A stretch of 64,000 nt of DNA, from positions 163,248-227,247 of IMG/VR virus record IMGVR_UViG_3300025012_000026. One strand, written 5' to 3'. Shown here piece after piece: positions 22,211 to 63,991 of this stretch (positions are counted from its first letter, which is position 1; the number at the start of each line of letters is the position of its first letter). Position numbers and translations under genes: made by a program. Under the pieces are notes generated by a model, which was given only the letters and a program-made list of their open reading frames with translations, made no database searches and was not told the origin of the DNA.

Positions 22211-22567
22211 TCATCTACATAACTTTAAATTTTTTAACCAATTTAATTCTTTTGGAAAATCATCATAATCGATAATTCCCATATTAATACATGTCAATGT
22301 ATTAGGTTCTAAATCCGTCCATCCTCTATCTCTGATAGCGATATAACCTTTAACTTCTAATTCCTCTAATTTTGATTGCGGAGCATAAAGAATAATTTTC
22401 TTTTGATAATTCGTCATATATAATTCAATAGTTGAATCGTATTCCTTACTCTCATCAATCATAAAATTATAAAAATATACTGCTACTGCGTGTCCGACTT
22501 GACCTGCAAGTTTTCCTTTATTGATTTCAATATCTTCATTAACTAATATATACATTCTTAAATCCAT
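22211..22567 (-). CDS. Peptidyl-tRNA hydrolase Pth2-like
   Basis: MYILVNEDIEINKGKLAGQVGHA..QKKIIL..IRDRGWT..PNTLTC..LKL. Confidence 0.85.
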   Translation of the reverse strand: MDLRMYILVNEDIEINKGKLAGQVGHAVAVYFYNFMIDESKEYDSTIELYMTNYQKKIILYAPQSKLEELEVKGYIAIRDRGWTDLEPNTLTCINMGIIDYDDFPKELNWLKNLKLCR

Positions 22568-22777
22568 AATTAAATCTCCTATCAATCTCTAAAAATCAAT
22601 TCTTTATCTTGATAATCCTGACTAATAACTTCATACTTAAACTCAGTCAATATTGCATAATTTCTACAAGTCCTTCATTTTCTTGATTAAAAGACACCCA
22701 AATTACTTCTTTTATATTTGTGTCTTTACTTTTACAGTAAGGGCATGGGATGTTGTTTATCATTATTTACTCCTTTT

Positions 22778-23069: not shown

Positions 23070-24779
23070 TTATTTCAAAACTCTCGCTCTAATTTCTGCT
23101 AAACTTTCATCTCTTACTAATTTTCCATCAATAAATACATCTTCAAGTAAATCAATAATATCAATTGCATCTTTTTCCATTTCATTTAATCCATCAACCA
23201 AATAGATACCATTTTCACCATCAACTACTGCAACCATTCCTTTTTGAGATTTTTTGATTCCACCAATATCGGTTTTAGGATCTTTAAAGATAAACTTTTC
23301 AACTCCATCAATAACCGTATAAGTGGCCTTTAAAGCGAACGAAAATGTGTCTCTGGTGTGATAACCTAAAGAATAACTTCCAACTCCGTATACGATGTTT
23401 TCTGCTGAAAACCCCTTTGCTTCTAATTGTTTGAAAGTTTCTTCTGCAATTTCTGGACTTATGCTATCTCCATATATTAAGCCCACATGACTATCTAGTA
23501 CCTTATACCCTTTACTATTAATAGTTCCTCCAAAGGTATCCCATAATGCTTCTACAGAACCCTTTTGCTCTATAGTTAATTTTACTTCTTTACAAATATG
23601 AACATTAGCACCATCAATATAATAATATTGTTTATCATGTCTATTCCAATCAATTTCAATAACAATTTCATAATGCTTATCTTGAAATTTAAAAATTGCA
23701 TCTTGCCTAGAAATACCATGTTCTCCATGAGGTGTATCATTTCTTATATCGTCAATTATTCTCTCCAACATAATTTCCTTGCAATCTTCCAGATTATCAC
23801 AATATTCTTCATTGGTTAAATCTTCAACAATCACATTACCGCAAATAATCTTTATTGGACTTCCAGAATCAGGACGAATGACACACTTACCATTTCTACT
23901 CATAATATCATCTTTCAATGAAGGTAAAATATTCCCCAAGACATTAAAATAATCATACCCATCACTAACTATACTTACAATTCCACTAGGGGCAACTTCA
24001 GTAATCATTCTCTTAAAATATCTCAAATCATCTTGATATCCACATTGAATACTATGTTCCGTTGCTAACACACTTGCTGAAACTAATTCCTTTTCCACAT
24101 TAACACCATAATATTGCTCTAAATATTGAATACTTGGAATCGTATCACTACCAGTAAAATATAATAAATGTCCTGCTCCTGTAGTTACTGCATCTTCATG
24201 ACCACTCATACCTCTATAACTAAAATTATGACATTGCCATTGAATATGATCTTTACTATCACATGTTTTCTCAGCCCACTTTTCACAAATGTCTCTATAT
24301 TTCTTTACAATTGTTGTTGCAGTAATTACTTTCCACATATTTGCGGAAATCAATGTCTCTAAGAAATTAGTCAACCAATAGAACTCTTTTTTAGTATTTT
24401 CAATTGTAAACACAGGAACTTTCATTGGAATCAATGTGCCTTCTTTTACTGCCTTGATTTTAATAGGAAGGTATCCTAAATCATGTAATGCTTCAATATG
24501 AGTTGTATCTGCACAATTATCTCCTAGAGAATTTTTAATGATTCTTTTATAATCTGCAACTACTATTGATTTATCAACATTGAAAAAGTTTTCATTGAAA
24601 TTATCAATTAGATAATCTTTAATAAATCCTTGTAAACCAAAGAATACTACTTCATTAATTCCTTCAATTCTTGAATGTCTAGGCGTAAATGTAGAATAAA
24701 TTTTTTCTGTACCTTTTTCACTCATAATGAGGTGGCTTATTTTGTACGAATCTGTCATTAACATTGGATTTGTTTTCAT
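23070..24779 (-). CDS. Nicotinamide phosphoribosyltransferase-like (Namat-like in NARP1 context)
   Basis: TDSYKISH, FFGLQ, HNFSYRG, ATEHS, SIVSDGYD, VIRPDSG, GLIYGDSI, KDPKTD..KKSQKG. Confidence 0.92.
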   Translation of the reverse strand: MKTNPMLMTDSYKISHLIMSEKGTEKIYSTFTPRHSRIEGINEVVFFGLQGFIKDYLIDNFNENFFNVDKSIVVADYKRIIKNSLGDNCADTTHIEALHDLGYLPIKIKAVKEGTLIPMKVPVFTIENTKKEFYWLTNFLETLISANMWKVITATTIVKKYRDICEKWAEKTCDSKDHIQWQCHNFSYRGMSGHEDAVTTGAGHLLYFTGSDTIPSIQYLEQYYGVNVEKELVSASVLATEHSIQCGYQDDLRYFKRMITEVAPSGIVSIVSDGYDYFNVLGNILPSLKDDIMSRNGKCVIRPDSGSPIKIICGNVIVEDLTNEEYCDNLEDCKEIMLERIIDDIRNDTPHGEHGISRQDAIFKFQDKHYEIVIEIDWNRHDKQYYYIDGANVHICKEVKLTIEQKGSVEALWDTFGGTINSKGYKVLDSHVGLIYGDSISPEIAEETFKQLEAKGFSAENIVYGVGSYSLGYHTRDTFSFALKATYTVIDGVEKFIFKDPKTDIGGIKKSQKGMVAVVDGENGIYLVDGLNEMEKDAIDIIDLLEDVFIDGKLVRDESLAEIRARVLK

Positions 24780-24780
24780 A

Positions 24781-25281
24781 TTATTTTACCTCTTTCTTAT
24801 TCATATTATTTAAATACTCAGCAACTTCTTCTAACGATTTAAAATACATTCCACCATTTCTTTCTACTATTAATCCGACCTGATTTAAAGATTTCATTTC
24901 TCCAATTGAAAAATTAATCTTATCATTTGGATAATTAATTTTATCTATAAACATATTAATATCAGGACTTCCAAGATAGCACATTGGATTTGGTACTTGT
25001 GTAATTATTGGAACTTCAGAATTTAATATACAAAATATAGTTTTTCCAGGACGTTTGTTGCTATCATCTATAACTTCTGCAATACTATAGACTCCACTCA
25101 TAGACGGAGTAATTACATATAAACAATAATCACATGTTTCACGTTGTCTACGCTCTTCTATCATACATTCTTCAGTCCAATCCTCTACAACTGGATTAAA
25201 ATAGTTAATATTAAGCATTGGAATTAATTTGTCTCTCCATATACTATTATTACAAGTACCGCCAAGGAATACTTTACTCAT
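24781..25281 (-). CDS. Nucleoside 2-deoxyribosyltransferase-like protein
   Basis: VFLGGTCNNSIWR..YFNPVVEDW..GVYSIAE. Confidence 0.75.
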   Translation of the reverse strand: MSKVFLGGTCNNSIWRDKLIPMLNINYFNPVVEDWTEECMIEERRQRETCDYCLYVITPSMSGVYSIAEVIDDSNKRPGKTIFCILNSEVPIITQVPNPMCYLGSPDINMFIDKINYPNDKINFSIGEMKSLNQVGLIVERNGGMYFKSLEEVAEYLNNMNKKEVK

Positions 25282-25284
25282 GAC

Positions 25285-26109
25285 TTAATTACCTTCTTTC
25301 ATAATTTTATATACTTCAATTTTATCATTTAATGATTCATTCATAATAGTATCTGTAGTGAAAACTTTATCAATCAAGTCTGTTTTAAATACATCGCCTT
25401 TGTAAATTGATTCCTCGCAATGTCCAACAACAAGATAAATTTCAGAAGCTCCAAGTTCTTTAAGTTGTTTTGCACCAAGCAAAAATGTTCCTCCATAACT
25501 TGATAAGTCATCCAACATTATTACTTTAAATCCTTTTTTCTTAACATCTCCAAAAACTTGAAGACTAGTAATTTTACCTGTTTGAAAATCTCTATGTTTA
25601 AATCCAACTAATTGATTTGGAACGCCAATCATTTTACTATAACGTTTCTCACTCGAAGCATCTGGGAAATAAACATAATCAGTATCATCATTGAAATTAA
25701 TTTTGTCTTTAATATCATAAAAAATATCTACAGATAGGAATCTACTTTTACAATTATTTAATAATGCAGGAGTTACATCAGAATGTGGTTCCAATACATG
25801 AATATAATCAAACCCTAAATTATTAATAAATTCTGCAATATATTTTAGTGTAAATGCTGAACCTCCTTCCGATCTATCCATTCTACTGTATGGCATGTAC
25901 ATGATATGTAGATTACAATTTATTTTTAATTGGTCTAGATATTTCTTTAAGAACAATAGTTTAATCAAGTCTGCATCTGATTGATACTTAAATGTAGTTA
26001 ACGAATTATTAACACCTCCTAAAATCTCATTAATTTGTTGTTCATTGAGTTTTGTTTCCCCATTTGGGAATGTAGTAAAATCTAATAGTTTGTTATTTAA
26101 CCAAATCAT
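25285..26109 (-). CDS. Ribose-phosphate pyrophosphokinase-like (Adps-like)
   Basis: FPNGE, YMPYSRMDR, EPHS, FPDASSEKRY, KHRDFQTG, LDDLSSYGGTF; start MIWLNNK after RBS. Confidence 0.9.
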   Translation of the reverse strand: MIWLNNKLLDFTTFPNGETKLNEQQINEILGGVNNSLTTFKYQSDADLIKLLFLKKYLDQLKINCNLHIMYMPYSRMDRSEGGSAFTLKYIAEFINNLGFDYIHVLEPHSDVTPALLNNCKSRFLSVDIFYDIKDKINFNDDTDYVYFPDASSEKRYSKMIGVPNQLVGFKHRDFQTGKITSLQVFGDVKKKGFKVIMLDDLSSYGGTFLLGAKQLKELGASEIYLVVGHCEESIYKGDVFKTDLIDKVFTTDTIMNESLNDKIEVYKIMKEGN

Positions 26110-26205
26110 TTTGTTTCCTCCTGAAATATTTATTTCTATATTCATACTACCACAATTTAGCATAATAAGTCAAGTTTAATTTAAACATCCTTTAAAATTT
26201 GATTT

Positions 26206-26538: not shown

Positions 26539-26596
26539 AAATCATCACCATTACAAACATAATCAACTGTCCCTTAATTTTTTAAAGATTTATAAA

Positions 26597-26684
26597 TACT
26601 TAACTCAAAATACCTAACTTAACACAACTCATCGCAACTTAACTCAAACCAACATATCTAAACCAAACCCAAAATGCTTATCTT
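26597..26684 (-). ncRNA. Second block of the pentamer-module array: one full 60-nt unit (26611-26670) plus two partial units
   Basis: Plus strand aaaa|tacct aactt aacac aactc atcgc aactt aactc aaacc aacat atcta aacca aaccc|aaaa; same grammar as 27189-27564. Confidence 0.75.
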
Positions 26685-26686
26685 AA

Positions 26687-27151
26687 TCAAAAACTATTAC
26701 TTAATACCAATTTACTCTTCTTTTTATTTAACAATTTTAATTCTGTACATCCTCCAGCAAGCATAGCATGAAGTGTTTTTGCTCTATCAGAAACATGCCT
26801 AAATGCCTCCAATCCCTCTTTTGACATTTCATTAACAGGAGCATATTGTAATACTTGATACCCTTTATCAATCTTATTAAAACCACTCTTAATATGTTTT
26901 AAAGACATATCAGTATATTCATCTGGATTAACAATTGAATATCCTTGACCTGCTAAGGATTTAATAGTTTTACTTGATTCAAGTAATTTCTTTTTTGTTT
27001 TACCAATAATAGAATAATATTTAGGTGTATTTTGACTTTCTTTAATAACCTCTTCAATTTCACTATGTAATATCGTAGTGTCATAATCCATTTTTACAAT
27101 ATACTCAAATAGTAATTCCCATTTTTCTTTTTTATTTACTAATTCATTCAT
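26687..27151 (-). CDS. Accessory protein embedded in the array locus (possible winged helix plus helical region)
   Basis: Flanked on both sides by array units; TIKSLAGQGYSIV resembles a wHTH wing. Confidence 0.65.
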   Translation of the reverse strand: MNELVNKKEKWELLFEYIVKMDYDTTILHSEIEEVIKESQNTPKYYSIIGKTKKKLLESSKTIKSLAGQGYSIVNPDEYTDMSLKHIKSGFNKIDKGYQVLQYAPVNEMSKEGLEAFRHVSDRAKTLHAMLAGGCTELKLLNKKKSKLVLSNSF

Positions 27152-27188
27152 TCTTATATCTCCTTTATTATTCTTATTTTGCCCATAA

Positions 27189-27564
27189 TGCCTATCAAAT
27201 CACAGCGTATCGTACCTCAACGAAACCCATCTCAACACAACTGATCCTAAAATGCCTAACAAAACCAAACTCATCACATTCAAGACGCAACTGAACATAT
27301 CTAATCATATCCCAACTTAAAATACATAACAGAACTTATCCCATCCAATCATAACGCAACAGAGCGAAACTGAACCTAAAATACTCATCAAAGCATATCC
27401 AAACCCACCCAAACCCTACTCAACGAAACTGAACATATATTGCTCAACTTAACTCGGCCAAACTTATCATAACGCATTTTATCTCGACGTAACGTAGCAT
27501 ATATTGCTTAACTTATCGTAGCTTGCCCTATCCCATCTTAACTCGCCCCAACCCAACAGAACCT
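27189..27564 (-). ncRNA. Putative guide-RNA array: six 55-66 nt units of (NN + GTT/GAT/GCT) pentamers separated by TTTT/ATAT linkers (VIPR-like)
   Basis: Strict 5-nt periodicity; no ORF >=60 aa; begins 12 nt after the stop of the Cas7-like gene; each unit ends GCA/GTA. Confidence 0.8.
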
Positions 27565-27576
27565 AAAAATCATATC

Positions 27577-28155
27577 TTACTCTACTTCTTCGACTACAGC
27601 TACAAACTGTCCATACTTAGGTCTACTATCACACAGTCCTACATATTTCCCTGCAAAATCAATGCTTTGAATTACAGCTTCTAGATCAATTTGAGACTCT
27701 TCATAATTTACAAAGAATGTAACTTGCCATGTGTCAAATCTTGCTCTAGTTCTTAAAATTGAAGCATTATTTACTTTCATAACTCTAACATCTCTATACT
27801 TTAAATCTGCTTTCAATTGTTCTTTGGTAAGATTTTCACCATATGCAAAAGGTATGTATAACGGTTCAACTGATAAGAATTTCTGAATAGCTGTGCCTTT
27901 CTTAATAGACTTAGCTCCATTTCTAATTGTGGCCTCTACATTTTCTGCTGGCATAAAAGTTCCCATATTATCCTTCCAATACAGACCACATTCCCATTCT
28001 AAGTCTGCAATCATTTCATGATCTTCGTCAGTTTTTGTTCTCTTACCCGTATATTTCTTTAGTTCCTTAGTTAGAGGATGAAGTGGGTTAACTCCTTGGT
28101 TTGAGTGCATAATTAATGGGGTAATACCTTTCCATGTAACTTTAAGTTTTTTCAT
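27577..28155 (-). CDS. Stand-alone Cas7/RAMP-like protein (Vipr-like)
   Basis: RAMP-like motifs: LKVTWKGITPLIMH, FMPAENVEATIR, RTRARFDTWQVTF, C-terminal Gly-rich loop AGKYVGLCDSRPKYGQF. Confidence 0.75.
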   Translation of the reverse strand: MKKLKVTWKGITPLIMHSNQGVNPLHPLTKELKKYTGKRTKTDEDHEMIADLEWECGLYWKDNMGTFMPAENVEATIRNGAKSIKKGTAIQKFLSVEPLYIPFAYGENLTKEQLKADLKYRDVRVMKVNNASILRTRARFDTWQVTFFVNYEESQIDLEAVIQSIDFAGKYVGLCDSRPKYGQFVAVVEEVE

Positions 28156-28201: not shown

Positions 28202-28230
28202 ATAATAACATGTTTATAGTAATTTGTCAA
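28202..28230 (-). promoter_or_regulatory. sigmaA promoter for the RAMP gene and array
   Basis: TTGACA-17-TATTAT with extended TG. Confidence 0.75.
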
Positions 28231-28773: not shown

Positions 28774-29457
28774 TTATAACATCACAATATCATTATAAAT
28801 CAACCTATGTTTCTCATCAATCCACCTATCCTCATGATAGTGGCCGAAATACCATTGCTTATAGTCCAATTTCTCTTCTAATACCTCAAAATACTTGTTA
28901 ATTGATGTTAAACTCTTTACGTATAATCCTGCCATTAACTTCTCAAAAACACTCTGAGAACAATCATGCGAAACAATAAGGTCAATTTTCCAACCACACT
29001 TATCTAGATTGCTCATACCTTCTTCATACTCAGCATTAGATGGCATTTCTCTTTTCCACCATGATTTGCCTTCAGTCCTATTCCCTTTATCAATTGAATC
29101 AGCTCCACCAAAAGTAAATATCTTTTTGCCATTGATATTAAATACCTGTCCACGCATTAAATGGATAACACTGTCATTAATAAAATGTACCTTACCACCA
29201 TTCCATATTGAGACTGGCATCTTATCTAGCATTGAATGGTTCTCATGGTTTCCATCTATCCATAAACTAACATAATTTTTCTTATGTAACCAGTTTAACC
29301 AATATTCTTCTTCCTTGTCTCCATTCCATACAAGTCCAAAATCACCACAAATTATCATGTAATCGTTTTTAGTCAGTTCTTTTTGAAGAGGGAAGTTTTT
29401 CATATTAAATCTTGGCAGGCCCATACTTCCATGAGTGTCACCACTAATGAATATCAT
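28774..29457 (-). CDS. Calcineurin-like metallophosphoesterase
   Basis: GDTHG, GDFG, DGNHENH, SHDC, FGHYH. Confidence 0.92.
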   Translation of the reverse strand: MIFISGDTHGSMGLPRFNMKNFPLQKELTKNDYMIICGDFGLVWNGDKEEEYWLNWLHKKNYVSLWIDGNHENHSMLDKMPVSIWNGGKVHFINDSVIHLMRGQVFNINGKKIFTFGGADSIDKGNRTEGKSWWKREMPSNAEYEEGMSNLDKCGWKIDLIVSHDCSQSVFEKLMAGLYVKSLTSINKYFEVLEEKLDYKQWYFGHYHEDRWIDEKHRLIYNDIVML

Positions 29458-29474
29458 AATATTATTTCTCCTTT

Positions 29475-32400
29475 CTATCCACAATTAATAAATTCATTCA
29501 CATGATGATCCACAAGATCACCATTATACAAAATACTATAAACATTACCATTCTTGTCGAATTCACAATCACAAGATAAACAAAATCGAGTAGTTTTACT
29601 GACTTCATTAGTCTTCTTACTATTACAATTGGGACAATTATGTATTTCTTCCGGCGCATCAGATTTAATTTTCTTAGGAGTATCCTGCTTACAAATGATT
29701 TTATATATTGTCGATAATGCTTGTCTATGCACAAAACTTTTAATTCCTTCTCCTGATGACATTCAATTTCCTCCTAATATTTTATTTCTTGATTATAGTA
29801 TAACATAATATGGATTAGAAAGCAAATGGAAAATTATTTAAAATTCACACAATCTAAACATGATTGGCCGTACTCTATCGATGAGCATTTTTTATAATCC
29901 ATACCAATAGTACATCTTTTCTCCATAAATCTTCGTTTAATTGAATCTGCTGCATCATAAAAACCAAATTTATTAGCAATATAATGTAAATCCTGCATCT
30001 GATCAATCAAAGAATCTTGTCTTTGTGGACATTGTTCTACTTTTTTAAGTTGTTCCTTCCAATTAGACATAATTATTCCTCCTATTTATAGTTTAAATGA
30101 GTATATCAATCAATTATCCTAATCACAACACGTTTAAATTCAGCGCACCCTTCGCATATATCCAAATTATCAGATAGAATAATTTGACTATCTTCATAAT
30201 CATTGAATAATAATTCCTTGAAGCAATCAATACAAAATTCAGCCATATAATTATTCCCTCTCTTCTTTATAAAATCTACCAACATAATAATATTTACTTT
30301 CATCCTCTACATCATCTTTAAACCATAAATTGCCTATAAACTCCTTAACCTGACCACCACAAGCCCAACCATCTTGTTCCATTTCTTTGATATGATTTAA
30401 TCTTTCTTCGGCATTATCATAATGAAATGTTTTTGAGTGAGAATATTTAAGTAGTTTCATTTAATTAATTCCTCCTTCGTTAAACATATTAAATACTTTG
30501 ACAAAACATATCAATGTCTGACTTCTTGCCTTTTAATGTAATTCTATATTCCACACTATTACATGGAAATCTAAATAGTGTAGCTACATAATCAATTTTG
30601 CAGTTTAGATTCAAGTCTTTTGCTAAAGAATTCGTGCTGTCTCTAAAACTAAAATCTCTAAACCCACCAACTATTTTATTGATAACTTTAGTTATTGTTG
30701 AATTAGTGTTTTCTAATTCTTGCTTTCCACAAATATAAGCATATTTAAAAATCATTTGCTCTCGTTCGGTTAAATCTATATTGGTTTTTTGTTCCAGTTC
30801 TTTAATATATTTATCCATAATTACCTCCTAACTTCCCATCTAATCAAAGTTTCACTCGCTTACAATTGATTTACACTTAGGACATCTATATAGGTAGATG
30901 AGTTGCTTAGAATATCTCCCATCATTATACACTCCACTATAGACATTAACTTCTTTATTATCTTCTGTAACAAATGATAATTGTAAAAATGGCATCTTTA
31001 ATTCATACATATTGTGTGAATAACCACACGCTTCACAAAGCATATATTATCATCCCTTCCATTCAATTCTTAGATTTATTCTGCTTCAATAATTATTTGA
31101 TCACCATTTTCTAACCCCGTAAAACATATCATTTATTTTAACTTTTAGATTGCTATCAGGAAAATTATGATTCCTTAAATATTTTTCAAGTTCAATTTCT
31201 TTCATTATCCTCGCTCCTTTTACCCTTTTATATCCTCGTTTTAATGTATCACTTTTCACCAGACTCCCACGTATCCTCTTCGCCATTTTCATGAACTGTA
31301 ACGCTAGATTCACACATAATACACTCATAATGATGAACTTCACTGTGCCCAATACCCTCTGATGAATCAAATTCCATTTTCTCTTGACAAAATTTACAAT
31401 GCATAATAATTCTCCTTTCAATTCCTTGTTTATACAAACAGATTTTCCACTTTACAATAAAAATTATCATCTTTATATAATACATCACCAACCAATTCCA
31501 AACTGGTACTGAATCCACCCATTAAAAATATGTCACATTTATCACCTTCTATTTTTATGCTTTTGACTACTGCCTTAATCCCTCGTTTTAATATAAATCT
31601 ATCAACAATTTCTTTAAAATCCATTTAATTTCTCACTCCTTTAAATATAATATTATACAAACTGTTACTTCTGTATAATATAACTATTTATTCATATATT
31701 TCTAAAGTTGGCAACTCGAATGAATCGCTATACTTTTTAGCTCCATCAAACCAAATACATATTGCTTTAGTTGCACCACTGTATACCCCTATACTTTCTA
31801 TAGTCATTGCAGGACTTCCGCTTTTTAATAGAACAACATCTCCACTTTTAAAATCGATTTTAATATCCCCTTCTCACTTTACTCACTAAATATACAGAAG
31901 CAACAGTATGTATATAATATAACATATTGTACCAATTATATAAAGTATATCCCTCGAAACTAGACATTCATGCTATTGGACTTTCTTCATCCATCCACTT
32001 AATAAACTCATGTATTTTTCGATACATTATTTGAAAATTTTCTTCTTCTTGCTTACCATCTCTTGAACTCATATAATATTCAAGAATTGATAATAACTCT
32101 CCTTTTGTCTTGCACCAAGTAGACCTTCTCATAAACATTAAATCGTCTTTATCCATTTATAAACCTCCTTTTAAATCACTTTTCAACGTGTTTCTAATTC
32201 ATTCTTAAAAATATTTAAATATGGTTTGTATTGGTCATAATCAACAACATATCTTGGAGGTGGTTCTGGAACTGTATCATAACGCTCCATGACATCTAAA
32301 AATTTACTGCGCTTGATCATTTTAATACAATTCTTAATATGATCTGTAGTCATTTCAGATATCTTTAAGTGCTTATTGTCTAAAGTTATCCAAACAGAAT

Positions 32401-61850: not shown

Positions 61851-63991
61851 TTAATGATATTTTTCTGATGCAATAGAAGAATCAATATTCATTCCCTTAA
61901 TTTTATCTTTCCATTTTTTAACCTCTTCATTATTTAGATATCCCGTATTAAGACATTCTCCGTCTACAAACAATGCTCTTCCAGACCTAAACAATTTGTT
62001 ATACTTAATATGATCATTGACATATTCATCCCTAACAATATTTACTACATGACTCCCATTTGCATAAACTCCTACAGAAATATGATTCACAATAATCATC
62101 CTCCATTTATTAAACTAATTTATGCTTCAACAAAAACTTGATTTGCTTATCCGTCAAAGTATCAATATCTAAATCTATAATTCTTTCATCACTACCTAAT
62201 TTTACCCAACCTAAGACTTCCAACAATCTTTCTGCACACCAAGGATGAGTATTGGTTAAGGGATCGATGATATTAAAACTAATCTCATTCCAATCTGCTA
62301 TTTCTTCAGCCTTTTTATAATGAGAAAGCAAATTGAAAGTGCTGTAAAATTTACCTTCAGGGGATAACCAACCGTTCATTAATTCACTCTCCTTTGGATT
62401 TAATTTAGTAACCAATACTATGATATAAACCCACAAACCCATATGCTCTGCTGTTATAGCGAATATGGGCTTAAATCACTAGCACAGATTAATAATAACC
62501 ATAGAATCCCATAAGGTAATTGTTATACATTTTGTTAAGATCGTCTGATGTAACCAAATTGCCTGAAAGTGTTTGAAAATATTCTTTCTTTGTTAGTGGT
62601 TTCTTTTCAACTTTATACTCGTTCATTTTAAATTAACTCCTTTCTTCACTCCGTTAAGTTTTACTTTTTATAGACTCTCTCCGCAAGCAGGACAAAAGAA
62701 CTCTACTTCACCTGATTCTAGGTTAATGTTCATTTCAAAATTTTCAAAACTAGTTTTACAGTTTGGGCATACCACTTTTGTCATATTATTGCACCTCCTA
62801 TTTTTTGATACCACCTAGCAGGATTGTTATGAACCCTGCTAACGCTCTGAGCTTAAGGCGTTTTATACTGGATCAGACCAGTTAATTTATTCCTTCCAAT
62901 AATTAACCCAAGCTAACTTTATAGAATCAACTGTTGAATTACTATCAACTACTACATTAAAACCATTAAAAATGCCTCCAATGGAGAAATCATTTCTTTG
63001 ATTTCTTTTAACCATTCTGTCCCATATTTCAAACAATCTTTCCACATACTCAATAAAAGATTCCATGTCAAATGGTTCAAATGTTCTTGCTAACATATTA
63101 ATACACTCTCCCTTAATTTAATTCTGCTTTCTAGTAAGCTTGCTTTCATGCTAATTTTCTTATGTCAATACTTCAATTCCAAATCCACCATCTAATGCTT
63201 CTATAACTTCTTCTAAACTATCACATTCAAGACTGTCCCAACCTTCAAGTCCTCTATCATCATCCATTAATATTAGGTATTTAATTACTTTGTCTACTGG
63301 TATTTTATCAATAATATCTTTTCTTTGATGTCTGTCGTTAACCTCATACTTTTTATCAGTCTTTTCTGAGAGGAAATCAATAAAAGCATATTTATCAATC
63401 TTTTCTCTCTCGATTAGCCATTTACCCTGTTCCTGGTCATACTCACTGTTATATCCCTCTAACACTCTACTAATCCAAAAGTCATTGGTATCCATACATA
63501 TAAATAACTTCTTATAGTAGTCTTTTGCATAGGAGAATAATTCACCTTTATCAATTAGTTGATTCATTTTACTTGTAACATCATAATATTTTGCAAATTT
63601 CATTTTATCATTTCCTTTCTAATTTAGAATAAGTTAAATAATAGACTTATGGGATAATTACCTATACCACTTCACAATTGACAAATAAAATCCAAATCCA
63701 TAAATATATTGATCACCATTTACAATTGCTTGCTTGAATTTATAAACCACGACAATATGCCTCCAATTCTTCAATTTGTTTTACGTGCTCATTGTAAACA
63801 TAATCAATATCAATAAAAGTATTTGAATCATATAGGCTAAAATCATAATTCTTCAAATGTGCTTTTGTTAATCCATCTAATAATATTTCAATCGCTTGAA
63901 CATCCTTATCCATTATAGCATTGTGAAGTTCATTGTTATACATAGAACGATATAGAATATACTCATTTTTAGACTGTAAACCACTTTGCAT
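61851..63991 (-). other. Small hypothetical ORFs (61851-62099, 62110-62442, 62887-63096, 63160-63603, 63740-63991)
   Basis: ORF track and RBSs. Confidence 0.55.

What the first reader, a model, noticed from the sequence alone, without database searches (positions are those of the whole stretch)
27189..27564. Decoded dinucleotide strings give testable gapped targets; scaffold is GWT rather than GGY
Seen, variable dinucleotides 5'->3' on the transcribed strand. U1: AG CT GG GG GA AA GG AG AA AC AA AA. U2: AT AC AC GA AA GC AT AA TG GA AA GA. U3: AT CA TC GA GG TG GG TG AT TT GA. U4: AG CA TC CT GC AT TG GG AA CT AT. U6: AG CA GT GA GG TC GA AC AC GT TT AG. U7 (26611-26670): GG TG TA AT GG GA AA GC GA GT AA AG. 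Every unit has a different string while the scaffold is constant, which is unlike slippage-derived microsatellites. The scaffold is mostly GTT/GAT with only occasional GGC/GGT. Inference: an AT-adapted subtype with 20-24 specified bases per guide.
Basis: partly seen in the sequence, partly recalled or inferred. Interest (0 to 1): 0.85.

Follow-up and report, generated by a model that had tools for sequence, protein, structure and literature searches.

The report
VIPR gapped-guide RNA array in phage
A large uncultivated phage carries a VIPR system: a Cas7-like protein plus seven short RNAs whose five-base repeats expose dinucleotides that read the codons of rival phages' capsid and replication genes. 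The kind of system is known; this copy uses a variant repeat scaffold.

Summary
Window 27183-27562 (minus strand) holds six head-to-tail units of 59-70 nt, and a seventh lies at 26605-26668. Each unit is 10-13 pentamers of G-(T>A)-T-N-N ending in a short conserved handle. No other place in the 64 kb has this period-5 G signal.

It is a VIPR locus (bioRxiv 10.64898/2026.04.26.720920).
- The upstream 192-aa gene is 32% identical (E 1e-32) to the protein beside the GGY/NN arrays of phage SUSP1. It falls in the same PHROG and folds like Cas7.
- The 154-aa gene between the arrays shares the PHROG of the SUSP1 accessory gene (inferred vap1).

Under the published 1-nt-skip rule:
- U2, U3 and U4 match, in codon register, three subclades of one gene family (phrog_8308, replication module) in AT-rich Clostridium-type (pro)phages.
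- U6 matches an SU10-type major capsid gene.
- U1 is tentative, U7 had no hit, and U5 was not tested.

The scaffold is not an AT adaptation. It tracks a Trp-to-Ser change at the G-loop residue that stacks on the second G in the solved Vipr structure. All four Ser lineages sampled (29-70% GC) have G-H-Y. Nine non-Ser lineages, one at 30% GC, keep GGY.

Verdict: a new variant of a known kind. Expression and binding are untested.

The parts
28202..28230 (-). Promoter-like site (TTGACA, 17 nt, TATTAT, with TG) just upstream of the vipr start
   Evidence: It is the best of 14 consensus matches, but the count is no higher than in shuffles, so this is only a candidate.
27577..28155 (-). vipr: 192-aa Cas7-like RAMP protein, the filament subunit that binds one pentamer each
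   Evidence: 32% identity, E 1e-32 to phiSUSP1 ALH47069, which is flanked by GGY/NN arrays. Both are in phrog_4652. AlphaFold pLDDT is 87.8. The top 41 Foldseek PDB hits are subunits of type III and type VII CRISPR effector complexes (Csm3 named), then a Cas6; best E 9e-6, TM about 0.5. RNA-contact residues H17, K33, E71, R137, D176 and R178 are conserved; W178 of SUSP1 is Ser177 here.
27563..27576 (-). Leader: a tail-like motif (GATATGATTTTTAG) preceding the first unit
   Evidence: Read. It resembles the inter-unit tail.
27499..27562 (-). U1 vrRNA unit. NN: CT GG GG GA AA GG AG AA AC AA, then handle
   Evidence: Tentative target: the 3' end of a Bro-N antirepressor-like gene (L069, 20/20, in frame). 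Other 22/22 hits sit on RBS/start-codon junctions in 38-42% GC contigs and look like chance.
27435..27498 (-). U2 vrRNA unit. NN: AC AC GA AA GC AT AA TG GA AA, then handle
   Evidence: 20/20 in 10 IMG/VR homologues of a 900-1080-aa phrog_8308 protein (peptide TTENAMKWEK) and in the Clostridium subterminale JCM 1417 chromosome.
27376..27434 (-). U3 vrRNA unit. NN: CA TC GA GG TG GG TG AT TT, then handle
   Evidence: 18/18, in frame, in two phrog_8308 genes (L050 E 3e-224; L051), peptide HSDGCGWIL.
27317..27375 (-). U4 vrRNA unit. NN: CA TC CT GC AT TG GG AA CT, then handle
   Evidence: 18/18 on the opposite strand, wobble-aligned, in a phrog_8308 gene (L053, E 3e-93). A second hit (L052) is out of phase and taken as chance.
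27247..27316 (-). U5 vrRNA unit, irregular: an extra T after the eighth pentamer shifts the register
   Evidence: It was not searched, because the pattern tool needs four plain leading bases when a variable gap is used.
27183..27246 (-). U6 vrRNA unit. NN: CA GT GA GG TC GA AC AC GT TT, then handle
   Evidence: 20/20 in 9 SU10-type major capsid genes (PF17236, E 1e-79) that are only 50-82% identical to the reference copy (L040); peptide QVEGSETTVF.
26687..27151 (-). vap1-like accessory gene (154 aa): predicted winged-helix N-terminal domain plus a long helical hairpin
   Evidence: phrog_5926, E 1e-5, the same PHROG as SUSP1 ALH47068. hhalign probability 53%, E 1.3e-4 over 108 columns. AlphaFold pLDDT 87. 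Weak Foldseek hits (E about 0.05) to winged-helix DNA-binding domains.
26605..26668 (-). U7 solo vrRNA unit downstream of vap. NN: TG TA AT GG GA AA GC GA GT AA, then handle. It is preceded by a tail-like GCATTTTGG (26669-26677) and followed by a degenerate mini-unit (26591-26604).
   Evidence: No exact hit in IMG/VR or in JGI metagenomes. An allele in L002 differs only at two NN positions.

Best explanation
This is a VIPR (Viral Interference Programmable Repeat) system of a large AT-rich phage. Inferred steps: the minus strand is transcribed through vipr, six contiguous vrRNA units, a vap1-like gene and a seventh unit, and the transcript is cut at or near the short GTTAR-GCATT-WTRN handle into RNAs of about 60-70 nt. 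By homology to the solved SUSP1-type complex, one Vipr protomer binds each pentamer. It buries the fixed G-H-Y trinucleotide and presents the two variable bases. The presented dinucleotides pair with double-stranded DNA while skipping every third target base. The guide therefore reads codon positions 1 and 2 of a gene and ignores the wobble base. Shown in silico: U2, U3 and U4 read three subclades of one replication-module gene family (phrog_8308), and U6 reads an SU10-type major capsid gene, all in Clostridium-type (pro)phages. Inferred function: the phage silences competing phages or prophages in the same host. The G-H-Y scaffold replaces GGY because the G-loop tryptophan that stacks on the second G in canonical Vipr is a serine in this clade.
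For: Period-5 arrays are unique to this locus. Vipr homology to SUSP1: BLASTP E 1e-32, shared phrog_4652, Cas7-like fold. The vap-like gene shares phrog_5926. All 17 IMG/VR relatives carry the same kind of array directly downstream of vipr. The arrays are hypervariable: L002 has a 100% identical Vipr protein and 93-95% identical flanks, yet no array match. Targets under the 1-nt skip rule: 10 of the 13 U2 hits lie in one gene family and extend to 20/20; 9 of the 11 U6 hits lie in one capsid family and extend to 20/20. Both U3 hits and one of the two U4 hits fall in the same phrog_8308 family as U2, at different alignment columns. All four guides are wobble-aligned, and the skipped bases vary among homologues while the NN bases do not. 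All target contigs are 26-36% GC, like the window at 29%, and one target is a Clostridium subterminale chromosome. phrog_8308 homologues occur in only 3 of 50,697 GenBank phage records, so three guides converging on it is very unlikely by chance. No self-targets were found. The published structure assigns G1 to H17 and D177, G2 to R138 and W178, and Y3 to E71, M72 and R179. Here every one of these is conserved except W178, which is Ser. Ser goes with G-H-Y in 4 of 4 lineages, and W/Y/F/M/N goes with GGY in 9 of 9.
Against: There are no expression, processing or binding data for this locus. The single alternative-gap control (U2 at a 2-nt skip) also gave 9 hits, and 3 independent ones extended to 20/22. 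A bare 20-base gapped match in IMG/VR is therefore not rare, and the ten U2 hits are homologous copies of one site rather than ten independent events. The case rests on family convergence, codon phase and host GC. U7 has no hit, U5 was not tested, and U1 is ambiguous. The capsid target and the phrog_8308 target were not seen on the same contig. The function of phrog_8308 is unknown: no Pfam, NCBIfam or PDB match. The vap assignment is weak. No structured 3' tail or pseudoknot like that of SUSP1 is evident. The Ser covariation rests on few lineages and a poorly supported tree.
Confidence: 0.85

Rival explanations
1. It is a genuine VIPR locus, but the predicted targets are coincidences. The real targets lie elsewhere, for example in elements not present in the public collections, or the pairing rule in this clade differs from the 1-nt skip.
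For: The 2-nt-skip control produced three independent 20/22 matches. U1 gave 22/22 hits at unrelated RBS/start junctions. A threshold of 80% NN match is reached by shuffled guides even in 0.7 Mb. U7 has no hit.
Against: Three different guides land in one rare gene family. Four of four are wobble-aligned. All lie in contigs of matching low GC. The control hits share none of these properties.
Confidence: 0.1
2. The periodic RNA is a protein-binding scaffold without a guide function. One version is a TRAP-like wrap-around regulatory leader for the downstream gene. Another is a decoy that soaks up another phage's Vipr.
For: Eleven or twelve evenly spaced triplets per unit resemble the (G/U)AG repeats bound by the TRAP ring (my own knowledge). 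Satellite-encoded decoy vrRNAs are reported for VIPR in bioRxiv 10.64898/2026.10.15.759431.
Against: A cognate Vipr gene sits directly upstream. The variable positions are exactly those that pair with targets in the solved complex. The NN strings are replaced wholesale between near-identical strains. They also spell conserved codons of other phages' genes.
Confidence: 0.03
3. It is a slippage-derived or otherwise non-functional pentanucleotide microsatellite.
For: It is a tandem short-period repeat in an intergenic region.
Against: Tandem Repeats Finder does not report it as a period-5 array, because the units differ. Three of five positions are constrained and two are free. The same architecture, with a conserved handle, recurs beside vipr in 17 loci down to 51% protein identity.
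Confidence: 0.01

Closest known systems
Type II VIPR of Escherichia phage SUSP1 (vipr + vap1 + vrRNAs; bioRxiv 10.64898/2026.04.26.720920 and 10.64898/2026.04.26.720927)
   Same: Homologous Vipr (32% identity, same PHROG) and a vap1-like gene (same PHROG). Pentamer repeats with a fixed trinucleotide and variable NN. vrRNAs sit on both sides of the accessory gene. Targets fit the 1-nt skip rule and lie in codon register in competing mobile elements. The residues that read G1 and Y3 are conserved.
   Different: The scaffold is G-(U>A>C>>G)-Y rather than GGY, and the G2-stacking Trp is Ser. Units are about 60-70 nt, against about 100 nt. The 3' handle is about 14 nt with no evident hairpin or pseudoknot, and units abut one another. 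This may correspond to the 'staggered arrays' named in that paper, whose figure I could not see. The array lies between vipr and vap rather than after vap. The carrier is an uncultivated phage on contigs of 146-268 kb at 29% GC, and the targets are Clostridium-type phages.
Non-canonical VIPR repeat arrays (GAC/NN, CAC/NN, WGT/NN, TGH/NN) reported from a genomic language model survey (bioRxiv 10.64898/2026.10.21.760802)
   Same: Period-5 arrays beside Vipr-like folds whose fixed trinucleotide departs from GGY. I also saw GAC/GCC-type arrays in L078 and L079.
   Different: GWT, GTT and GHY are not named in that text. It offers no protein-side explanation and no target predictions. Its figures could not be inspected.
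Class 1 CRISPR Cas7 backbone filaments (Csm3, Cmr4, type VII Cas7)
   Same: Same fold class by Foldseek. In both, one subunit binds each repeat of the guide and a thumb flips bases out at a fixed period.
   Different: There is no CRISPR repeat-spacer array and there are no other cas genes. The period is 5 with three bases sequestered, against 6 with one flipped. The target is read discontinuously.

Membership tests
VIPR system | A Vipr protein (minimal RAMP: RRM core, G-rich loop, thumb) is encoded next to the RNA array | tested here: met
   BLASTP E 1e-32 to the SUSP1 protein; phrog_4652; Cas7-like fold, E 9e-6; C-terminal G-loop G-L-C-D-S-R-P-K-Y-G.
VIPR system | vrRNA made of roughly 9-16 tandem pentamers with a conserved trinucleotide alternating with hypervariable NN | tested here: met
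   7-18 pentamers per unit. Information content is 2.0 / 0.5 / 1.2 bits at positions 1-3 and about 0.1 bits at positions 4-5.
VIPR system | The conserved trinucleotide is GGY | tested here: not met
   Position 2 is G in only 7% of 829 pentamers. The defining paper allows 'a related consensus', and a later preprint lists non-canonical motifs, so this marks a variant rather than an exclusion.
VIPR system | An invariant 3' tail caps each repeat tract (a structured pseudoknot in the SUSP1 clade) | tested here: inconclusive
   A conserved GTTAR-GCATT-WTRN handle closes 64 units. It is only about 14 nt with no obvious stem by eye. No folding run was done.
VIPR system | An accessory vap gene lies in the locus | tested here: met
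   The 154-aa gene is in phrog_5926 like the SUSP1 accessory gene. hhalign E 1.3e-4. Winged-helix-like model. Support is moderate.
VIPR system | Natural targets obey the 1-nt skip rule, with the skip base on codon wobble positions, in competing mobile elements, and there is no self-targeting | tested here: met
   U2, U3, U4 and U6. No self-target. One 2-nt-skip control gave only scattered hits, and I did not check it for a shared gene family or codon register. Skips of 0 and 3 and shuffled strings were not run at database scale.
VIPR system | The RNA-contact residues of the solved complex are conserved (H17, K33, E71, R138, D177, W178, R179) | tested here: inconclusive
   Six of seven are conserved. 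W178 is Ser, which coincides with the loss of G2.
VIPR system | vrRNAs are expressed, co-purify with Vipr and repress targets | not testable with these tools
   Needs small-RNA sequencing, pull-down and reporter assays.
CRISPR-Cas | A direct repeat-spacer array with a period of about 60-79 nt, plus cas1/cas2 or effector modules | tested here: not met
   Units have no long direct repeat. Of the ten ORFs around the locus that were scanned, only the Cas7-like protein resembles a cas gene.

The most novel reading that the evidence does not exclude
The G-loop residue equivalent to SUSP1 W178 may be a specificity switch that defines mutually orthogonal VIPR scaffold classes: aromatic gives GGY, Ser gives G-H-Y. 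Such a switch would keep a phage's guides private. Rival phages or satellites that deploy solo or decoy GGY vrRNAs could not load them onto a Ser-type Vipr, and the reverse would also hold. The Ser state appears in several separate branches of the family tree, which would make it a recurrent move in the arms race over guide hijacking.
Probability: 0.3. Interest if true: 0.7.

Novelty: new variant of a known kind. Interest (0 to 1): 0.5.

Why it matters
First, it extends the non-contiguous VIPR code from E. coli and Pseudomonas phages to a clade only 32% identical, in large AT-rich phages of anaerobes. It also gives concrete predicted targets: a capsid gene and a replication-module gene family of Clostridium-type (pro)phages. 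Because the guides read only codon positions 1 and 2, one guide covers homologues that have diverged to 34-50% protein identity.

Second, it offers a simple, testable structural rule for how the fixed part of the guide can change. One G-loop residue accounts for GGY versus G-H-Y independently of genome GC. That bears on engineering orthogonal VIPR tools and on how phages might protect their guides from decoys.

Third, the 2-nt-skip control is a caution. Bare 80-90% or even 20-base gapped matches in large viral databases occur by chance, so target calls need codon phase and convergence of several guides as support.

Tried and rejected
- TRAP-like or other ring-protein binding leader: my first thought from 11-12 evenly spaced triplets. 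Dropped once the adjacent gene proved to be a Vipr homologue.
- Known RNA family: Rfam gave only a Pistol ribozyme, elsewhere in the window.
- Close DNA relatives among GenBank phages: none by megablast.
- Local target search: about 90 guides from 15 loci against 0.7 Mb of fetched sequence at skips 0-3. Real guides scored the same as shuffled ones, and there was no self-target.
- Guides from other loci against the phrog_8308 and capsid genes, in frame: no signal beyond the window's own guides.
- U1's perfect 22/22 hits (L021/L023, the same contigs as L066/L067 from 'LV_Brine', and L068): rejected as likely chance. The string mimics a Shine-Dalgarno site plus start codon, the hits straddle gene junctions out of codon register, and the contigs are 38-42% GC.
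- U4's hit in L052: rejected because the skip base falls on codon position 1.
- U7: no exact match in IMG/VR or JGI metagenomes. Its best local near-match is a TnpB gene in L011, which is no better than shuffles.
- Function of phrog_8308: nothing from Pfam, NCBIfam or PDB sequence searches.
- 'AT adaptation' as the cause of the scaffold: rejected on L075/L076 (30% GC, GGT) and L077-L079 (46-70% GC, G-H-Y).

Full report
1. THE OBSERVATION

On the minus strand, G recurs every five bases. Windows with G at 9 or more of 11 such positions occur only at 27177-27572 and 26604-26673 in the whole 64 kb, on either strand. Parsing gives six abutting units that start at 27562, 27498, 27434, 27375, 27316 and 27246, and a seventh at 26668. 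Each unit is 10-13 pentamers G-W-T-N-N followed by a 9-nt tail of the form G[CT]AWT WTRN. Tandem Repeats Finder does not call a period-5 array here, because the units are not copies of one another.

2. WHAT IT IS

All neighbouring ORFs are on the minus strand. A literature search on the pentanucleotide guide idea found the VIPR preprint (bioRxiv 10.64898/2026.04.26.720920). It describes a minimal RAMP protein (Vipr), an accessory gene (vap), and vrRNAs made of 9-16 GGY/NN repeats with a 3' tail. These recognise double-stranded DNA while skipping one target base per repeat.

The 192-aa ORF directly upstream of the array (27577-28155) matches this description:
- It is 32% identical (E 1e-32) over its full length to phiSUSP1 ALH47069.
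- I identified that SUSP1 gene as its Vipr because GGY/NN arrays flank it and its neighbour.
- Both proteins fall in phrog_4652.
- An AlphaFold model (pLDDT 87.8) finds subunits of type III and type VII CRISPR effector complexes (Csm3 named) as its top 41 PDB matches, then a Cas6 (best E 9e-6, TM about 0.5).

The 154-aa ORF between U6 and U7 (26687-27151) looks like vap1:
- It falls in phrog_5926, as does the SUSP1 accessory gene.
- It aligns to that gene by hhalign at E 1.3e-4.
- It models as a winged-helix-like domain plus a helical hairpin.

The family is large: 2,290 clusters at 50% identity with E at or below 1e-3.

3. RELATED LOCI

Seventeen IMG/VR loci encode relatives at 51-100% identity, on contigs up to 227 kb. 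The exact protein also occurs on a 268-kb contig. Every one has the same kind of array immediately downstream of vipr.

Over 829 pentamers:
- Position 1 is G (by construction of my parser).
- Position 2 is T 63 / A 17 / C 13 / G 7.
- Position 3 is Y 96%.
- Positions 4-5 are near background composition.

Sixty-four units end in a conserved GTTAR-GCATT-WTRN handle.

The NN strings are not conserved. L002 has an identical Vipr protein and flanks 93-95% identical in DNA, yet its array has no blastn match to the window's. The solo unit U7 differs from its L002 allele at two NN positions only.

4. TARGETS

A local search of about 90 guides against 0.7 Mb at skips 0-3 showed nothing above shuffles and no self-target. 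I then used the capped public scans. Each query was the central nine dinucleotides (18 specified bases) at a 1-nt skip, and I judged each hit by whether the remaining dinucleotides also matched.

Summary by guide:
- U2 → phrog_8308 gene family. 13 IMG/VR hits, 10 at 20/20, in codon register.
- U3 → phrog_8308. 2 hits, both 18/18, in frame.
- U4 → phrog_8308 (L053). 2 hits; one is 18/18 and wobble-aligned on the opposite strand, and the other is out of phase.
- U6 → SU10-type major capsid gene. 11 hits, 9 at 20/20.
- U1 → tentative: a Bro-N antirepressor-like gene (L069).
- U7 → no exact hit.
- U5 → not tested.

U2. Ten of the 13 hits also match the first dinucleotide (20/20). All ten encode the peptide TTENAMKWEK in a 900-1080-aa protein of phrog_8308. 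The contigs are 26-31% GC, and the proteins are only 34-74% identical to the reference copy (L031). The skipped bases vary while the NN bases do not. A 20-base scan of GTDB genomes hit the same gene family in the Clostridium subterminale JCM 1417 chromosome.

U6. Nine of the 11 hits reach 20/20 in SU10-type major capsid genes (PF17236, E 1e-79). These are 50-82% identical to the reference copy (L040) and lie on 6-20 kb contigs of 27-36% GC.

U3. Both hits are in frame in phrog_8308 genes (L050 E 3e-224; L051).

U4. One hit is wobble-aligned on the opposite strand of another phrog_8308 gene (L053, E 3e-93). The other is out of phase.

The three phrog_8308 sites lie at different alignment columns in three subclades. 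In L031 the gene sits between a DnaD-like helicase loader and a Holliday-junction resolvase, with terminase genes further downstream, so I place it in the replication module.

In every target family the last dinucleotide of the unit (the GTTAR pentamer) fails to match, so it belongs to the handle. The dinucleotide supplied by the end of the preceding tail does match in all ten U2 sites and in five of nine U6 sites. That would fit units that overlap their neighbours.

5. HOW STRONG IS THE TARGET EVIDENCE

The one alternative-gap control I could afford (U2 at a 2-nt skip) returned 9 hits. Three independent ones extended to 20/22. A 20-base gapped match in IMG/VR is therefore not rare in itself. 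The ten U2 hits are also homologous copies of a single site, not ten independent events.

The weight of the evidence lies in four other points:
- Three different guides converge on one gene family that occurs in only 3 of 50,697 GenBank phage records.
- Four of four guides are in wobble register.
- The target contigs have the same low GC as the carrier phage.
- The sites are kept across deeply diverged homologues.

The control hits lie in unrelated contigs of 30-42% GC, and a 4-nt period cannot stay in codon register. I did not check them for a shared gene family.

U1 is ambiguous. Its 22/22 hits sit on RBS/start-codon junctions in 38-42% GC contigs and look like low-complexity coincidences. 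An in-frame 20/20 hit lies at the 3' end of a Bro-N antirepressor-like gene in a 33% GC contig. U7 has no exact hit, and U5 was not tested.

6. WHY GWT INSTEAD OF GGY

The structural preprint (bioRxiv 10.64898/2026.04.26.720927) assigns the contacts as follows:
- G1 is read by H17 and D177.
- G2 sits between R138 and W178, with the Trp stacking on it.
- Y3 lies in a pocket formed by E71, M72 and R179.
- K33 contacts the backbone next to the skipped base.

In the window protein and in all 11 relatives whose protein aligned (L013 did not align past residue 17), H17, K33, E71, the thumb Arg, the Asp and the Arg are conserved. W178 is Ser.

I then checked arrays beside other family members.
- Non-Ser residue at position 178, all GGY: SUSP1, MakoManhole, LittleE and Trine (W); Medea1 and LESphi2 (Y); P0126 (F); P0165 (N); P0206 (M). 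The P0126 contig is only 30% GC and has a similar GGATTTTGA tail.
- Ser at position 178, all lacking the second G: the window clade (29% GC, T>A), P0157 (46% GC, T/A/C), P0242 (61% GC, GCC/GAC) and P0181 (70% GC, GCC).

In a FastTree of 150 representatives the Ser tips fall in several separate branches, though supports are weak. The scaffold therefore follows the protein, not genome composition.

7. COMPARISON AND NOVELTY

Membership in VIPR is well supported. The Vipr homologue, the pentamer architecture, a handle, a vap1-like gene and 1-nt-skip targets in rival elements are all present. Only the literal GGY consensus and a structured tail are missing.

Alternative consensus motifs and staggered arrays are already mentioned in the defining paper. 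A later preprint lists non-canonical motifs (GAC, CAC, WGT, TGH) without naming this one. I could not see their figures.

What is new here:
- The G-(U/A)-U scaffold clade in large AT-rich phages.
- Its predicted targets.
- The Ser-for-Trp explanation of the scaffold.

I rate it a new variant of a known kind, of moderate interest.

8. LIMITS

- Nothing here shows transcription, processing, RNP formation or repression.
- The promoter-like site at 28202-28230 is only a consensus match, and no terminator-like site was found.

Noticed in passing
window 62809-62882 (-): A Pistol self-cleaving ribozyme: Rfam RF02679, 55.3 bits against a gathering score of 34.5, full-length match.
   Followed up: no
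window 23070-26163 (-): An NAD-salvage gene cluster just downstream of the VIPR locus: NAMPT-like nicotinamide phosphoribosyltransferase (23070-24779), a nucleoside 2-deoxyribosyltransferase-like gene (24781-25281) and a ribose-phosphate pyrophosphokinase (25285-26163). From my own knowledge, this resembles phage NAD-reconstitution counter-defence pathways.
   Followed up: no
window 22211-22585 (-) and 28774-29484 (-): A PTH2-type peptidyl-tRNA hydrolase homologue and a calcineurin-like metallophosphoesterase flank the region.
   Followed up: no
whole window: Extreme strand asymmetry. The + strand is G 10%, C 19%, A 32%, T 40% (29% GC). All 12 ORFs of 250 aa or more are on the minus strand, and there are no tRNA genes. 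The same Vipr protein occurs on contigs of 146-268 kb, so this is probably a jumbo phage.
   Followed up: partly
L002:10578-10927 versus window 27183-27576: A strain with a 100% identical Vipr protein and 93-95% identical flanks carries a completely different set of guide units, so the array has been replaced as a cassette.
   Followed up: partly
L011:12244-13560 (+), near-match at L011:12286-12317: A TnpB-like gene (PF07282 E 2e-19; OrfB_IS605, below cutoff) lies about 1.7 kb downstream of vipr in a relative. It holds the best local near-match of U7 and of its L002 allele (16/18, wobble-aligned). The three sequences differ only in the two central dinucleotides. The match is not significant against shuffles.
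   Followed up: partly
L057-L065 (control hits): The U2 string searched at a 2-nt skip still found three independent 20/22 matches in IMG/VR. Thresholds such as 80% NN match, or single perfect gapped hits, are weak evidence on their own in large databases.
   Followed up: yes
window 27247-27316 (-) and 26591-26604 (-): U5 has a one-base insertion that shifts the pentamer register after the eighth repeat. A degenerate two-pentamer mini-unit with its own tail-like end follows U7.
   Followed up: no
L031:6652-9468, L050:2243-5503, L053:4194-7349: The target gene family phrog_8308 (900-1090 aa, replication module of AT-rich prophages) has no Pfam, NCBIfam or PDB sequence match. It is an uncharacterised, apparently important phage protein.
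   Followed up: partly
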